64,000 nucleotides of DNA from Blastocladiella emersonii ATCC 22665 (Eukaryota > Fungi > Blastocladiomycota). Below are positions 4,591 to 9,025 of this stretch, piece by piece (the stretch's first letter is position 1; every line of letters begins with the position of its first letter). The notes below the pieces were generated by a model. The model made no database searches, was not told the DNA's origin, and worked only from the letters and a program-made list of their open reading frames with translations. A program made the translations under genes and the position numbers. The DNA is taken from positions 1,922,001 through 1,986,000 of the forward strand of contig JANHCV010000003.1 in NCBI GenBank assembly GCA_025594325.1. Direction: 5' to 3'.

Positions 4591-7500
4591 ATGTCCGCCG
4601 ACCCCGGGCGGCCCGCGCCGTCGCTGCCCGGCCACGGCTACGCGTCGCCGTCGTCGCTGCCCTCCTCGGCCGCGGGTAGCGGCGCCGCGCCCGGCCCGTC
4701 GCTCGAGCTCGCGTCCGACCAGGCGTCGCTGCTGCCGTCGGCCATCGACCCGCCGCCGCACATCGACTTCCACCACGGCCACCACCATCAACCGCACGCG
4801 CACGCGCTCGCGCCCCTCGCGCCGCCCAACCCGTACCTGACCGGCGGCTACGCGCTGCCGCCGCCGCCGATGCCCTTCAACCATCACCACCCGACCTCGA
4901 CGCCTTATAGCAGCAGCGCCGCGCTCACGGCGCCGCCCTCGTCAACTGGCGGCTCCCTCGCGCGTCTGACCCCGTCGTCCTTGCTCCCACCACCCGCGCC
5001 CCCTGCGGCCCCGGCCCCGACCCCGCTCGCTACGGGCCCCGCCGCGGCGCTGCACATGCACTACCTGACGACGAGCTTCATGGCGGCGCAGGCCGCGCAG
5101 GCCCAGGCCGTGCACACGCACGCGTCGTCGTACATGGCGACCGACCGCATGCAGCCGAACCTGTACGCTGCTGCCGCCGCGGCGGCTGCGGCTGCTGCTG
5201 CTGCTGCGGCAGCGGGCACGCCGTACCCGGGCCTCCCCGCTCCTGGTCTCGCGCCGTACTCGCTCGCGTTCCCCGGTGCCGCCGCCGCGATGGGGTCGTC
5301 GTACGCGATGCCGACGGCCGCGGCGGCGGCGGCGATGGCCGCGATGCGGATGCCGATGATCCAGCCGCCGACGTCGACGGCGGGGGCCGCGAGCGCGGTC
5401 GGGATGCCGCAGTTCCACCACCACCAGAACGCGCCGGCTTCGTCATCGACGTCGAGCGCGACGGGCGCGTACGACGCGGGGTCGGTCAGCATCTTCGATC
5501 CGGCAGCGGCCGCAGCAGCCGCGGCGAGTCTTGCGCTCGGGATCCAGCAGCAGCACACGCCCATGCTCCCGCCGCCCCTGCCGGCGACGTCCAACGCGGC
5601 GGCGGTCTTCGCGGCATCCACCGCGCCGGCGAGTAGTAGTGGCTGGGCGCCGATGCCGGTGCCGATCTCGCCACCAGTCGTTGCCTCGATGTCGGCCCGC
5701 AGCAGCTCCTTCGCCGCGCCGGCGCCCGTGTCGGCCGCAAGCAGCAGCAGCGCGTTCGCCCCGCTGCGCGCCACGACGTGTCCGCCGCTCCCGCTGCCGG
5801 CACGCCCGCACTCGGCCCCGCTGTTCCCGCCCGCGTCCATGGCGGCAGGCGTCGTGACCGCGAGTCGCCCGCTCTCGAGCGCGGGGATCCGGATACCTCC
5901 ACCACCACCGGCGACTACACCGGCTGCTTCCCACCCGCTCTCGACTGCCACCTCGTCGCTCCCACTCTCGGCTCCCGTCGCGGCATCCTCACTCCCCCTC
6001 GCGGCGCCGGCCGTCGTCCCGCCGCACCCGACCACGGTCGTGCACACGAACCCCGTCGCCTCCTCCTCGTCGCTGCCGCCGTCATTCCCGCACCCGCTCA
6101 ACCCGAACCTGAGCCTCGGCCTCTCTACGCCCGCCGCGTCCGGGTCTGGGAGCCCGGCCTCGGGTATCGTGGCGTCCGCCCCGGCGACCACCGCCGCTGC
6201 CGCTGCCGCCCAGTCGCGCCTGGTTTCGCCACCACCACCACCGCCTCCCGCACCAGCGGCGCCGGCGCAGCCGCAGCCTCATTCGCATCCGCCTCGGTTC
6301 CGCCCCATCGCCGCGCGCCCGCTGCCGCCCGGCTCGGCCGCGCCCGCGAGCAACTCGCTCGCGCCGCTGCTAAGCCCGACCTCGGCTGCCGCCCTCCCGA
6401 TCAAGGTGCCGCTGCCGTACGTGCCCCCGGCGCCCGGCCTGGTTCCGCCGCCGTACGCGCCGCCGGTCGTGGCGCAGCGACAGCAGCAGCAGCAACAAGA
6501 GCAGCGGCAGCAACAGCAGCAACAGCAGCAGCAACAAGTGCAGCAGCAGGTCGGTAGTGTCGCCGAGGCGCTGTCCCTCGCCGACGCGCGGCTGCAGCAG
6601 GAGCCGCCGCCGGCGCAGCACTCGCACCCGGCCAGCCCGCTTCTCTCGCTGTCGCACGCGGCGACGCCGTACTCGGCCCCGCTCACCGCCGGGGACGCGA
6701 CGCCGCCCGAACCCGAGCCCGACTCGGCGGCGGCAACAACGTCCGATGCGTCGGCGCTCCCCGCCTCCGTCCCCGCGAGCGCTGGAATGCGCAAGCTGTC
6801 GCGGATGCTCGCCGAGCACGAGGCGCGCATCGACCTGTCGGTGCTGCGGCACCAGGCGGGCGACGGGCGGTACCGCAAGCAGCAGCGGTTCCAGCGCACC
6901 GTCGAGGCAGTCCAGGCCATTGTCCACGGCAAGCTGTACAAGGCCAAGTTCTCGTCCCTCGAGACGTACTTCCGCGCGCAGTGGCGCATCTCGCGCGCCC
7001 AGGTGTACCGGTTCCTCGACTGTGCCGTCATCTTACGGGTACGCGCGTGCTGGTGGTGAGGGATGCGATGGGGTGGTTCGAGCGCTCATCACGTTGCGCG
7101 TGTAGGAACTCGCCGACTTCCCCGAGACCCCGACGCGCGAGCGGCTGTGCCGGTCGCTCAAAAAGCTGACCAAGAGCAAGCTCAACCGGCGCATCCTCTG
7201 GCAGGCGGTTCTCGACCGGTTCGGCGCCGAGGAGCGCGACTCGGTGACCTCGACCGCGCTGGGCGCCGTCTGGAAGTGCCTGGTCAAGGAGGGCCGCGTC
7301 GACCCGAACGCCCGCGCCGCCGAGGAGGACGGCTCGGACCTCGACTACGACGACCTCGCCGCGGCCGCCGCCGTCTCGGCCGCGTCCGCCATCGGGCACC
7401 ACCACGCGACCTCGTCGTCAGCGACCTCGGTCGTCACGTCGCCGTACTCGGCCACGCTCCCCGGAAGCGAGGTCGTGTCGCCCGAGTCGCGCACCTCGCT

Positions 7501-9025
7501 CAAGCGCCCGTTCCCTGGCGGCTCGCCCGGCATGAGCGACGCCGAGGACGACGACGGCGGTTTTGTCGGTGGCGCTGACGACGACGAGTTTCGCCCGTCG
7601 CCGCACTCGCACCCGCACCACGCGGTTCCCGGCGGTTTCCGCGCCGCCGGCCCCTCGTCCCGCACGCGCCTCCGCAAGGTCTCCCGCACGGCGGCCCGCG
7701 ACTCGCTCCCCGAATCGCCCTACTCGGGGCCGCTGCACCACGGCCACGGCCACGGACACGGACATGACCACGCTCACGCGCACATCCACCACCCGCTCGG
7801 CCTCGGGCTCGCGCTCGGTCTGAGTCTCGCCAACACGCAGATAGGCGCCCCGCCGGCGGGCGCGGGCGACGAGAGCGGCGACGACGATGCGCCGCCGCTG
7901 TCCCCGCTCAACGTGCGCGGGCGGTCGTTTAGCGACGACGACGAGGACGAGGGGGATGAGGCCGAGTCGCAGCTCATGTCGCCCGTGTCCGCGACGAGCG
8001 GAATGGCCGCGCTCGCCGCCGAAGCCGCGCGCGCGCGGTCCGCGAGCGCCGCGGACGCACTTGCCGCCGCCGCTCCCGCCCAGAGCGCCATGCCGCGCCG
8101 CGGCTCGTACCCCGCCCTCGTCCCGCCCCCGCCACCGCCTGCGCTCCCGCCCCCGCCGCCCCCGGCCCCGCGGCACCGCGTGACGGCGACCATCCGCCGC
8201 CCTCCCCCGCCACCGCTCCCGCTCCCGCCCCCGCCCGTCATCACGCCGCACGCCGACGCGCCCGCCGGCGTCTTCAACACGCTCGTCGACGTGCAGCGCC
8301 TGTACAGCCACGGATTCGCCCTGCAGCCGCGGATCAACGGCGAGTGGTTCACGGACACGATCGAGCAGTGGCGACTCGTCCGCGTCCCCGCTGTCCCGCC
8401 GCCGACGTCGTCGGTGCCGTCGAGCGCTGCGGCGACGCCGCGCCGTGTCGCTGGGGTACCGCCGCCGCTCGTGCCACCGCCGCCACCGGCGCCAGCGGTG
8501 CAGCAGCAGCAGCAGCCGAGGGTCACGGCCGCGGACCTGCTTCTCGCGCCTGATGCGGACGAGGCTGCGGCCGAGGTTCTCGCGGCCGCGACGACGCTCG
8601 CGGGCGGGGTCCGGAACGCGGCGTACCCCGCGCAGCAGCCGGCGGTCGCGTCGCCGTTCACGCCCGCCCTCGTCGAGCCGTGCGCCCCCGTCGCGACGGT
8701 CGAGGAGGGCGCGCTCGCGCTCGAGCGGCTCCGCGCGGCTGCTGCTGCAGCCTCGTCTTCCTCGCCGGCGGCACCGCAGCGTAACGACGAGTTTGGCGCG
8801 AGCCCGATCGCGACGCTCGTCCGCGCCATCCAGAACCCGCTCGCGCAGCTCACGTCCGCTGCCGCCGCCGCCGAGAGCGTGGTGTCGTCGCCGGCGCCCG
8901 CGCACGTCGACGGGATGGGCACCGCCGCGATGGTCGTCGACCACGATGAAGCGGCAGCCGCCGCGGCGGCGGTCGTTGGGATGTTTCTCGCTGACGCGGC
9001 GCGGGGTACCGGTGTGGAGACCTGA
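4591..9025 (+). CDS. Large Pro/Ala/Gln low-complexity protein with one compact HTH-like domain (putative DNA-binding regulator)
   Basis: ORF 4591-7038 joins ORF 7106-9025 through a 67-nt GT-AG intron (7039-7105), giving a continuous globular segment KLYKAKFSSLETYFRAQWRISRAQVYRFLDCAVILRELADFPETPTRERLCRSLKKL. A candidate 5'UTR intron lies at about 4527-4588. Confidence 0.75.

What the first reader, a model, noticed from the sequence alone, without database searches (positions are those of the whole stretch)
6787..7300. Bacterial/phage-like HTH domain embedded in a fungal low-complexity protein: candidate undescribed transcription-factor family
Seen: the only clearly globular region of a roughly 1450-aa Pro/Ala/Gln/His-rich protein is a ~150-aa spliced domain (LYKAKFSSLETYFRAQWRISRAQVYRFLDCAVILRELADFPETPTRERLCRSLKKL...RRILWQAVLDRFG). 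It matches no standard fungal DNA-binding class I recognise (Zn2Cys6, bZIP, bHLH, HMG, APSES). Recalled knowledge: the pattern LY+..h.+fE.Y....W..SR...YR.I..A.V...L...PT.ER..R.L..L....R..W..AV...G resembles uncharacterised HTH proteins of cyanobacteria, plasmids and phages. Inference: a horizontally acquired DNA-binding domain that has been domesticated (it contains a spliceosomal intron and is flanked by activation-domain-like tracts), analogous to the viral KilA-N origin of APSES factors.
Basis: partly seen in the sequence, partly recalled or inferred. Interest (0 to 1): 0.8.

Follow-up and report, generated by a model that had tools for sequence, protein, structure and literature searches.

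The report
ParB-type HTH family in zoosporic fungi
A long, mostly disordered fungal protein carries one small, strongly basic helix-turn-helix domain. The domain defines an undescribed gene family of flagellated (zoosporic) fungi, and its detectable relatives outside those fungi are plasmid and phage DNA-binding proteins of bacteria, so it is probably an anciently captured DNA-binding module.

Summary
A two-exon gene (4591-7038, 7106-9025; 67-nt GT..AG intron; 1455 aa) encodes a low-complexity protein. Its main conserved part is a 149-aa basic domain (pI 10.5) at 6787-7038 plus 7106-7300.

- **Intron:** no RNA run was listed. An uninterrupted Allomyces ortholog reads straight across the junction. 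The same phase-0 intron position occurs in Paraphysoderma, Geranomyces and a Batrachochytrium paralog.
- **Family:** a fungal-only profile finds 260 representatives at E<=1e-10. All of the roughly 45 that carry an organism name come from zoosporic fungi or an aphelid. None of 119 full-length members has a Pfam domain, and no paper was found.
- **Fold:** AlphaFold2 of the Allomyces ortholog (74% identical) gives pLDDT 92, all-alpha, with a clear HTH. It resembles the ParB/Spo0J/KorB/SopB DNA-binding domains (Z 5-7) and Raf1-alpha (Z 8).
- **Prokaryotic relatives:** homology is solid. hhalign gives 98.8%, and a bacterial/viral-only HMM scores the window's domain at 54.9 bits. Relatives sit on cyanobacterial and Streptomyces plasmids and phage contigs. 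They lie next to ParA-type ATPases or DNA methylases, or are fused to methylases or a primase zinc ribbon.

I read it as a nuclear DNA-binding regulator built on an anciently acquired ParB-type HTH. DNA binding, transcription-factor function and the direction of transfer are inferred, not shown.

The parts
4591..7038 (+). Exon 1 of the gene (816 codons, counted from the first ATG of the ORF; the true start was not verified). It is a Pro/Ala/Gln/His-rich low-complexity N-terminal half followed by the first 84 residues of the domain.
   Evidence: ORF list and translation; composition and homopolymer runs.
7039..7105 (+). Spliceosomal intron, 67 nt, GT..AG, phase 0. It lies directly after the recognition helix (..LDCAVILR | ELADFP..).
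   Evidence: Reading through meets a stop at 7057-7059 and the downstream frame is shifted by one. Profile positions 85 and 86 abut across it. An intron-less Allomyces ortholog is contiguous here. An intron sits at the same position in Paraphysoderma, Geranomyces and Batrachochytrium. No RNA run was listed.
7106..9025 (+). Exon 2 (639 codons plus stop). It holds the last 65 residues of the domain, then an acidic, low-complexity C-terminal half (pI 5.2).
6787..7038 (+). N-terminal part of the conserved basic domain (residues 733-816 of the protein). It includes the helix-turn-helix.
   Evidence: Alignment to orthologs; HMM match to positions 2-85; model of the 74%-identical Allomyces domain, pLDDT 92.4.
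7106..7300 (+). C-terminal part of the domain (residues 817-881). It has four further helices and the invariant P..ER.CR.L and LW motifs.
6958..6984 (+). First helix of the HTH (LETYFRAQW), followed by the turn RIS at 6985-6993.
   Evidence: DSSP of the model, helix 61-69 of P0004:628-782, mapped onto the window through the alignment. The mapping to window coordinates is my own arithmetic.
6994..7038 (+). Recognition helix (RAQVYRFLDCAVILR; its last residue, E, is the first codon of exon 2). S-R-A-Q-V-Y-R is invariant in the ortholog alignments.
   Evidence: Model helix 73-88; invariant columns S72 to D81.
8270..8392 (+). Second conserved island (aa 1205-1245). It is predicted as one helix followed by a beta-hairpin. 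Its role is unknown; it could be a dimerisation or partner-binding module.
   Evidence: BLASTP islands shared with Allomyces, Paraphysoderma, Geranomyces, Powellomyces and Gonapodya proteins; alignment A8; AlphaFold2 pLDDT 76.9.

Best explanation
The gene encodes a nuclear DNA-binding regulator, most likely a transcription factor. Its single DNA-binding module is a stand-alone ParB/KorB-type helix-turn-helix domain. In this reading the basic domain (pI 10.5) docks on DNA through the helix LETYFRAQW, the turn RIS and the recognition helix RAQVYRFLD. The flanking helices complete a ParB-like DNA-binding platform. The long Gln/Pro/Ala/His-rich and acidic disordered arms would recruit other factors, and the small C-terminal island would provide partner or self-association. 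The domain founds a multi-paralog family found so far only in zoosporic fungi and an aphelid. That family is homologous to small HTH proteins of bacterial plasmids and phages that act in partition, replication and DNA-methylation modules. The likeliest history is a single ancient capture from such a mobile element before the zoosporic fungal phyla diverged, followed by intron gain and paralog expansion. Shown here: the gene model (by comparison with other genomes), family membership, phyletic spread, fold and homology to the prokaryotic family. Inferred: DNA binding, nuclear and transcriptional role, and direction of transfer.
For: - **Gene model and conservation:**
- **Family size:** the fungal-only profile finds 2571 representatives at E<=1e-3, 260 at <=1e-10 and 76 at <=1e-30 among 1.84 billion proteins.
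- **Taxa:** every named member is from Blastocladiomycota, Chytridiomycota, Monoblepharidomycota, Neocallimastigomycota or the aphelid Amoeboaphelidium. Allomyces macrogynus alone has at least three paralogs.
- **Fold:** pLDDT 92.4, pTM 0.85, ten helices with an HTH. In the search of representative PDB chains, the top 13 of 48,161 chains include Spo0J (Z 6.9, 108 aa, 3.2 A), ParB-parS (6.4), KorB (5.8 and 5.7), SopB (5.1) and P1 ParB (4.8). ESM Atlas matches include phage proteins (TM 0.62-0.67) and a ParB_N protein (0.52). BFVD phage proteins match at probability 1.0.
- **Sequence homology to prokaryotic proteins:** hhalign 95.8%, 96.6% and 98.8%. The fungal HMM scores a phage UViG protein at 45.8 bits and Chroococcidiopsis and Fischerella plasmid proteins at 41 bits. 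Rescaled by me to the 1.84-billion-protein library, those are E of about 5e-7 and 2e-5. A bacterial/viral-only HMM scores the window's spliced domain at 54.9 bits, against 4.3 bits or less for unrelated window ORFs. tblastn gives E 2e-4.
- **DNA-related contexts of the relatives:** in a Streptomyces plasmid the gene overlaps the end of a ParA-type ATPase gene. Fusions occur to an N6/N4 DNA methylase, a Dcm methylase and a DnaG-type CHC2 zinc ribbon. An N6/N4 methylase is the neighbour on a phage contig.
- **Charge:** domain pI 10.5 with acidic or neutral flanks.
- **Single origin:** the fungal sequences form one clade against the 13 bacterial ones (support 100).
Against: - No experiment or expression data support any of this; no RNA run was listed.
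- The structural Z-scores (5-8) lie in the range the tool warns can reflect a common helical arrangement. The single best PDB match is Raf1-alpha, a chaperone domain that is not a DNA binder.
- Foldseek against the PDB gave nothing at E<=1e-3.
- No ParB_N, HTH_ParB, KorB or DUF3102 Pfam match was found in fungal or bacterial members.
- The start of the recognition helix (S-R/K-A-Q-V/A-Y-R) is nearly constant across the family representatives I inspected. That is unusual for a transcription-factor family that has diversified its targets.
- No classical basic NLS cluster was found; no 8-residue window holds 5 or more K/R.
- Only 13 bacterial sequences were in the tree, and the tail of the 2571 hits could not be listed. 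Donor, direction and absence from other eukaryotes are therefore not established.
Confidence: 0.6

Rival explanations
1. The domain binds DNA, but the protein is a chromatin or epigenetic factor rather than a classical transcription factor. For example, it could read or target adenine-methylated DNA, a mark reported to be abundant in early-diverging fungi (from my own knowledge, not checked here). The domain would have been inherited from methylase-linked ParB-type HTH modules.
For: Prokaryotic relatives repeatedly accompany DNA methylases: fused to an N6/N4 methylase in Iamia, fused to Dcm in Gloeothece, and next to an N6/N4 methylase on a phage contig. Iyer et al. report a ParB-type HTH fused to a Dam-type methylase in chytrids and chlorophytes (PMC4738411). 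The near-invariant recognition helix across paralogs fits a common ligand better than diversified motifs.
Against: None of the 119 fungal members scanned carries a methylase or any chromatin-reader domain. No methylase-fused protein appeared among the 119 full-length family members scanned (drawn from the listed hits). Nothing was tested with respect to methylated DNA.
Confidence: 0.15
2. The domain has lost DNA binding and serves as a protein-protein interaction or scaffold module, as the structurally similar alpha-domain of Rubisco accumulation factor Raf1 does. The disordered protein would then act as an adaptor or condensate scaffold.
For: The best PDB fold matches are Raf1 alpha-domains (Z 8.0 and 7.4), above ParB. 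The invariant surface helix could be a conserved protein interface. The protein is about 85% low-complexity sequence.
Against: The domain is strongly basic (pI 10.5, net charge about +16). Its sequence relatives sit in DNA-handling contexts. No sequence similarity to Raf1 or any other PDB chain was detected. The conserved Ser/Arg at the N-cap of the second HTH helix is shared with the bacterial proteins.
Confidence: 0.15
3. The gene is a remnant or passenger of a mobile element or virus resident in this genome, not a domesticated host gene.
For: The prokaryotic relatives are plasmid and phage genes. Weak BFVD rows include Pandoravirus proteins.
Against: Orthologs and paralogs exist in all zoosporic fungal phyla with an intron at a conserved position. 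There is a single copy in the 64-kb window. A scan of viral contigs with the fungal motifs confirmed no relative by tblastn. The tree has strongly conserved orthologous clades.
Confidence: 0.03

Closest known systems
Central HTH DNA-binding domain of ParB/Spo0J, KorB, SopB, P1 ParB, Noc and VirB
   Same: An all-alpha domain with an HTH. The model superposes over 98-119 residues at Z 4.8-6.9. Bacterial sequence relatives occupy the ParB position directly downstream of a ParA-type ATPase on a Streptomyces plasmid. In KorB, specificity comes from contacts outside the HTH. I take that only from the title of Khare et al. 2004, as listed in the references of PMC5415576. It would be compatible with the invariant recognition helix seen here.
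   Different: There is no N-terminal ParB_N (CTPase / sulfiredoxin-like) domain and no Pfam HTH_ParB or KorB match. The protein is eukaryotic, contains an intron and is embedded in more than 1200 residues of disordered sequence. There is no partner ParA.
Unnamed HTH proteins of cyanobacterial and Streptomyces plasmids and of phage contigs (for example WP_010999851.1 on Nostoc PCC 7120 pCC7120alpha, WP_330628012.1 of Streptomyces cellulosae, IMG/VR locus L015)
   Same: Demonstrable homology over about 110 columns: hhalign 98.8%; 41-46 bits with the fungal HMM; 54.9 bits in the reverse direction. The motif order is the same: LY+..F.[ST]FE.Y...W..SR..[AV]Y.L..A..V...L...P..E...R.L, then W..A.
   Different: Identity is 22-33%. 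The bacterial proteins are 160-330 aa, intron-less, annotated 'hypothetical', and lie in partition, replication or methylase modules. The fungal clade is separated from them by a long, fully supported branch.
ParB-type HTH fused to a chlorophyte-type Dam methylase in chlorophytes and chytrids (Iyer, Zhang and Aravind 2016, PMC4738411)
   Same: A ParB-type HTH of phage origin reported in chytrid fungi.
   Different: That protein is an N-terminal fusion to an adenine methylase. None of the 119 members of the present family has a methylase domain. I could not fetch that protein, so whether the two HTHs are specifically related was not tested.
APSES / SBF-MBF transcription factors derived from the viral KilA-N domain (Medina et al. 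2016, PMC4862756)
   Same: A precedent for a DNA-binding domain from a virus or mobile element captured early in fungal evolution and turned into a transcription-factor family (abstract).
   Different: The relationship is analogy only. No KilA-N or APSES Pfam match was found. The present fold is all-alpha, whereas KilA-N is a different fold to my knowledge (not tested here). APSES factors persist in Dikarya, whereas this family has so far been seen only in zoosporic lineages.
Alpha-domain of Rubisco accumulation factor 1 (Raf1)
   Same: The highest structural scores: Z 8.0 over 119 residues and 7.4 over 98 residues.
   Different: No sequence similarity was detectable. Raf1 is a chaperone of cyanobacteria and plants and has an additional beta-domain. 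The Z value is within the range the tool flags as possibly generic for helical proteins.

Membership tests
ParB/KorB-type HTH DNA-binding domain (fold / superfamily level) | An all-alpha DNA-binding domain containing an HTH that superposes on the central domain of ParB, Spo0J, KorB or SopB | tested here: met
   Model pLDDT 92.4. Spo0J Z 6.9 (108 aa, 3.2 A); ParB-parS 6.4; KorB 5.8 and 5.7; SopB 5.1; P1 ParB 4.8; VirB 3.7. The first six of these are within the top 13 of 48,161 chains; VirB is at rank 42. Caveat: Z below 8 can be a generic helical arrangement, and Foldseek against the PDB gave nothing significant.
ParB/KorB-type HTH DNA-binding domain (fold / superfamily level) | N-terminal ParB_N (CTP-binding, sulfiredoxin-like) domain, as in canonical ParB, KorB and Noc | tested here: not met
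   No Pfam ParB_N in the window protein, in 119 fungal members or in the bacterial relatives examined.
ParB/KorB-type HTH DNA-binding domain (fold / superfamily level) | Match to a curated sequence model of ParB-type HTHs (Pfam HTH_ParB, KorB, DUF3102) | tested here: not met
   No such hit even at E up to 5. DUF3102 and Plasmid_parti_N appear only as language-model neighbours, which are leads only.
ParB/KorB-type HTH DNA-binding domain (fold / superfamily level) | Binding to specific DNA sites | not testable with these tools
   Needs EMSA, DAP-seq or protein-binding microarray.
Unnamed plasmid/phage HTH family (cyanobacteria, Streptomyces, Verrucomicrobiota, IMG/VR phage contigs) | Significant profile-level sequence homology over the whole domain, in both directions | tested here: met
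   hhalign 96.6% (E 5e-10) and 98.8% (E 1e-16). The fungal HMM gives 45.8 and 41 bits. The bacterial/viral-only HMM gives 54.9 bits on the window's domain, with decoys at 4.3 bits or less. tblastn E 2e-4.
Zoosporic-fungal family defined here (orthologs of Allomyces AMAG_03573) | Invariant motifs KLY, Y-F, SRAQVYR, P..ER.CR.L and LW over about 150 aa, with colinear alignment | tested here: met
   74.5% identity to Allomyces proteins over 149 aa; invariant columns; groups with AMAG_03573 in the tree (SH-aLRT 94).
Standard fungal DNA-binding classes (Zn2Cys6, C2H2, bZIP, bHLH, HMG, homeodomain, Myb, APSES/KilA-N) | Match to the corresponding Pfam model | tested here: not met
   No such family in the whole window protein or in the ortholog domains.
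Raf1 alpha-domain | Sequence relationship to Raf1 and presence of the Raf1 beta-domain | tested here: not met
   Only structural similarity (Z 8.0 and 7.4). No PDB sequence hit for the fungal or bacterial profiles at E up to 10.

The most novel reading that the evidence does not exclude
The family could be a eukaryotic heir of the methylase-linked or partition-linked ParB-type HTH modules of phages and plasmids. It might work not as an ordinary promoter-binding factor but as a reader or targeting subunit for adenine-methylated DNA, or as a ParB-like protein that marks and bridges specific chromosomal sites, in zoosporic fungi. A function tied to their unusual 6mA-rich chromatin (6mA abundance is from my own knowledge, not checked here) would explain why it has not been seen in terrestrial fungi.
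Probability: 0.1. Interest if true: 0.85.

Novelty: new variant of a known kind. Interest (0 to 1): 0.62.

Why it matters
Catalogues of fungal transcription factors are built from Pfam families, so a family with no Pfam model would be missed. Yet it has at least 260 representatives (50%-identity clusters) at E<=1e-10. It has several paralogs per genome in Allomyces and a large expansion in the gut fungi (Neocallimastigomycota). It also has a member in the amphibian pathogen Batrachochytrium dendrobatidis.

If it binds DNA, it would be a major lineage-specific regulator class of the zoosporic fungi. It would also be a second clear case, after APSES/KilA-N, of a mobile-element DNA-binding domain recruited early in fungal evolution.

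The work also gives the many 'hypothetical' proteins on cyanobacterial and Streptomyces plasmids a family context as ParB-like HTH proteins. Finally, it offers a testable link between phage and plasmid DNA-methylation or partition modules and eukaryotic chromatin.

Tried and rejected
- **Family scans of the two exon pieces:** Pfam, PHROGs and NCBIfam gave only noise.
- **Contiguous ortholog domains:** Pfam and PHROGs gave nothing significant.
- **PDB sequence searches:** single sequence, fungal profile and bacterial profile gave nothing.
- **Foldseek against the PDB:** nothing at E<=1e-3; nuclear-receptor and TFIIB rows had TM about 0.2 and were discarded.
- **Word-index search with the fungal profile for short proteins:** returned fungal fragments and one weak bacterial hit, P0062. 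The word-index search with P0062 found only one further relative.
- **tblastn against the phage genome collection:** nothing significant with P0062, the Verrucomicrobial protein or the Allomyces domain. Phage presence was shown only through IMG/VR contigs.
- **Scan of viral contigs with fungal motifs:** no relative.
- **RNA-seq support for the intron:** no run listed.
- **Searches for papers naming AMAG_03573, AMAG_01438, AMAG_11911 or BATDEDRAFT_90358:** none found.
- **Transposon or virus remnant:** considered and rejected (conserved intron, orthology).
- **Chance ORF or low-complexity artefact:** considered and rejected (E values down to 1e-78; high-confidence fold).
- **APSES/KilA-N membership:** considered and rejected (no match).
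- **Not possible here:** listing the tail of the 2571 profile hits; fetching the chytrid Dam-HTH fusion; handing the window's own spliced protein to the remote tools. The 74%-identical Allomyces domain was folded instead.
Full report
**1. What is in the sequence**

The window is GC-rich (67%). On the + strand an ORF runs from 4591 and meets a stop at 7057-7059. Removing 7039-7105 (GTACGC...GTGTAG, 67 nt) joins it in phase to the frame that continues to the stop at 9023-9025. The product is 1455 aa with no internal stop.

The protein is 20% Ala, 15% Pro and 11% Ser, with poly-A(16), poly-Q(10), poly-P and HG runs. It is strongly basic (pI 10.5; 32 K+R against 16 D+E). The N-terminal arm is neutral and the C-terminal arm acidic (pI 5.2).

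**2. Is the domain real, and is the intron real?**

A word-index search with exon 1 as query, scored on its last 92 residues (which hold the exon-1 part of the domain), found 23 hypothetical proteins of zoosporic fungi. These are Allomyces, Paraphysoderma, Geranomyces, Powellomyces, Gonapodya, Neocallimastix, Anaeromyces and Irineochytrium.

The spliced domain aligns to them end to end, with no gap at the exon junction. Identity is 43-75% and E values run from 4e-78 to 2e-29. A profile of fungal domains (A2) matches exon 1 at positions 2-85 and exon 2 at positions 86-150.

- The Allomyces macrogynus ortholog (AMAG_03573) has no intron here and reads ..AVILR ELADFP.. continuously.
- Paraphysoderma (105 nt), Geranomyces (115 nt) and the Batrachochytrium paralog BATDEDRAFT_90358 (126 nt) have a GT..AG phase-0 intron at the identical codon boundary.
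- Neocallimastix has none.

The intron is therefore old. It predates the split between Blastocladiomycota and Chytridiomycota and at least one paralog duplication. The comparative support for splicing is strong. No RNA run was listed for this stretch, so direct expression evidence is missing.

Outside the domain, only one further island is conserved: aa 1205-1245, window 8270-8392. It is predicted as a helix followed by a beta-hairpin (pLDDT 77).

**3. The family**

Pfam, PHROGs and NCBIfam (on the exon pieces), Pfam and PHROGs (on contiguous ortholog domains) and PDB sequence searches give no family for the domain.

An exhaustive hmmsearch of the fungal-only profile against 1.84 billion representatives found 2571 proteins at E<=1e-3, 260 at <=1e-10 and 76 at <=1e-30. 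Only the best 150 are listed.

Cluster look-ups of 30 of them, plus the names from the first searches, gave about 45 named members. All are zoosporic fungi or an aphelid:

- Blastocladiomycota: Allomyces (three paralogs: AMAG_03573, AMAG_01438, AMAG_11911), Coelomomyces, Sorochytrium, Paraphysoderma.
- Chytridiomycota: Batrachochytrium, Boothiomyces, Obelidium, Nowakowskiella, Blyttiomyces, Phlyctochytrium, Chytridium, Rhizophlyctis, Dinochytrium, Fimicolochytrium.
- Monoblepharidomycota: Gonapodya.
- Neocallimastigomycota: an expansion of short N/K/I-rich paralogs.
- Aphelid: Amoeboaphelidium.

None of the 119 full-length members scanned has any Pfam domain at E<=1e-3, apart from one marginal FRG1 hit.

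In a maximum-likelihood tree of 114 fungal and 13 bacterial domains, the window groups with AMAG_03573 and a JGI protein (SH-aLRT 94). Several paralog clades are visible.

First-reader notes on other pieces of this genome describe four more 'phage/bacterial-like HTH in a long disordered protein' genes. These are plausibly the paralogs, but I could not check them. No paper names these genes.

**4. Fold**

The window's own spliced protein cannot be passed by reference, so I folded the 74%-identical Allomyces domain with alignment A1. The result was pLDDT 92.4 and pTM 0.85, with ten helices.

Helix 61-69, the three-residue turn and helix 73-88 form the HTH. In window terms these are LETYFRAQW, RIS and RAQVYRFLDCAVILRE. 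The intron falls at the end of the recognition helix.

| Library | Result |
|---|---|
| Foldseek against the PDB | nothing significant |
| Representative PDB chains (48,161), Raf1 alpha-domains | Z 8.0 and 7.4 |
| Same search, Spo0J | Z 6.9 |
| Same search, ParB-parS | Z 6.4 |
| Same search, KorB | Z 5.8 and 5.7 |
| Same search, SopB | Z 5.1 |
| Same search, P1 ParB | Z 4.8 |
| Same search, VirB | Z 3.7 |
| ESM Atlas, phage proteins | TM 0.62-0.67 |
| ESM Atlas, a ParB_N protein | TM 0.52 |
| BFVD, phage proteins | probability 1.0, TM about 0.6 |

The Z values lie in the zone that the tool flags as possibly generic for helical proteins. The structure alone is therefore suggestive rather than decisive.

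**5. Prokaryotic relatives**

The profile word search gave one weak non-fungal hit, P0062. Its contig has overlapping genes and a 23S_rRNA_IVP neighbour, so it is prokaryotic.

A scan of bacterial genomes with P0062 and P0197 found seven loci in Verrucomicrobiota, Deltaproteobacteria and Iamia. tblastn with one of them found 112 plasmids, mostly Nostoc (35) and Streptomyces (26). IMG/VR held five phage-contig loci.

Statistics:

- hhalign of the fungal against the bacterial profile gives 95.8%, 96.6% and, with 18 bacterial and viral sequences, 98.8% (E 1e-16, 111 columns).
- The fungal-only HMM scores a phage-contig protein at 45.8 bits and Chroococcidiopsis and Fischerella plasmid proteins at 41 bits. 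Rescaled by me to 1.84 billion sequences, these are E of about 5e-7 and 2e-5.
- An HMM built only from bacterial and viral sequences scores the window's spliced domain at 54.9 bits and exon 1 alone at 27 bits. The unrelated window ORFs among the 959 targets score 4.3 bits or less.
- Plain tblastn of the Allomyces domain reaches E 2e-4 on cyanobacterial plasmids.

Contexts:

- On a Streptomyces linear plasmid the gene overlaps the stop of a ParA-type ATPase gene (AAA_31/CbiA). This is the ParB position of a partition operon.
- In Iamia the domain is fused to an N6/N4 DNA methylase.
- In Gloeothece it is fused to a Dcm methylase.
- In a deltaproteobacterium it is fused to a DnaG-type CHC2 zinc ribbon.
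- In Chroococcidiopsis it follows a DUF3987 gene.
- On the phage contig its neighbour is an N6/N4 methylase.

None of these proteins matches Pfam ParB_N, HTH_ParB, KorB or DUF3102.

**6. Interpretation**

The domain is a ParB/KorB-type HTH at the fold level. By sequence it belongs to an unnamed plasmid and phage HTH family. In zoosporic fungi it stands alone inside long disordered proteins.

The basic charge, the HTH and the DNA-handling company of its relatives make DNA binding the likeliest activity. The Q/P/A-rich and acidic arms fit a transcriptional regulator.

The start of the recognition helix is almost invariant across paralogs. That is unusual for a diversifying transcription-factor family. 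It is compatible with the KorB precedent, where specificity lies outside the HTH. I know that only from the title of Khare et al. 2004, listed in PMC5415576. It is also compatible with a common ligand.

Rivals are a chromatin or 6mA-linked role, a Raf1-like protein-binding role and, very unlikely, a mobile-element remnant.

Three observations point to one ancient capture from a prokaryotic mobile element: wide bacterial and phage distribution, restriction (so far) to zoosporic Holomycota, and a single, well-separated fungal clade. However, only 13 bacterial sequences were in the tree and the tail of hits could not be inspected. Donor and direction remain inferred.

**7. Comparison with the known, and novelty**

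Iyer, Zhang and Aravind (PMC4738411) noted a ParB-type HTH in chytrids, but as the N-terminal part of a Dam-type methylase. No member of the present family has a methylase domain, and I could not fetch that fusion to compare it.

APSES/SBF from KilA-N (PMC4862756) is the closest evolutionary analogue, not a relative.

I therefore rate the finding as a new variant of a known kind. The HTH superfamily is known. The architecture is new and stand-alone. The family is eukaryotic, intron-bearing and expanded, and it lacks both a Pfam model and any literature I could find. Function is untested.

**8. Verdict**

- My confidence is about 0.9 in the homology and fold assignment, about 0.7 in DNA binding and about 0.5 in a transcription-factor role.
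- Interest: 0.62.

Noticed in passing
window 7039-7105; L020 750-854; L021 870-984; L023 954-1079; L008 3592-3684; L022: A phase-0 intron lies directly after the recognition helix at the identical codon boundary in the window, Paraphysoderma, Geranomyces and a Batrachochytrium paralog. It is absent from the Allomyces ortholog and from Neocallimastix. Many metagenomic ORF fragments of the family also end at profile position 84-85, apparently running into the same intron.
   Followed up: yes
window 8270-8392: A second conserved island of the same protein (aa 1205-1245; consensus G-Y-x-L-Q-P ... G-x-W ... Q-W-R-L-V) is shared with orthologs in Blastocladiomycota, Chytridiomycota and Monoblepharidomycota. 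It is predicted as one helix followed by a beta-hairpin (pLDDT 77). Its function is unknown.
   Followed up: partly
model of P0004:628-782 (ortholog of window 6787-7300): The best PDB fold match is the alpha-domain of Rubisco accumulation factor Raf1 (Z 8.0 and 7.4), above ParB and KorB. This hints that Raf1-alpha may itself have a ParB-like HTH fold. No sequence link was detectable.
   Followed up: partly
L006 3099-4223; L010 1846-3783; L015 1386-2372 and 2974-3486; L011 2808-4750; L007 3503-4240: Bacterial and phage relatives of the domain recur in DNA-methylase company: fused to an N6/N4 methylase, fused to Dcm, and next to an N6/N4 methylase on a phage contig. One sits in the ParB slot behind a ParA-type ATPase on a Streptomyces plasmid, and one is fused to a DnaG-type zinc ribbon. 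All are annotated 'hypothetical' and lack a Pfam model for the HTH part.
   Followed up: partly
proteins P0118, P0125-P0151, P0161, P0179 (Piromyces, Neocallimastix and rumen-type metagenome contigs): The anaerobic gut fungi carry a large expansion of short (200-430 aa) N/K/I-rich paralogs with the variant recognition helix W-N-I-S-K-A-Q-A-Y-R-Y-L. UniRef names one of them (P0133) an F-box protein, but Pfam did not find an F-box at E<=1e-3.
   Followed up: partly
other pieces of the same genome (notes s1-269666, s1-260240, s1-256449, s1-273313): Four other first-reader notes describe phage/bacterial-like HTH domains inside very long disordered proteins elsewhere in this genome. They are probably the paralogs expected from the three Allomyces paralogs.
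   Followed up: no
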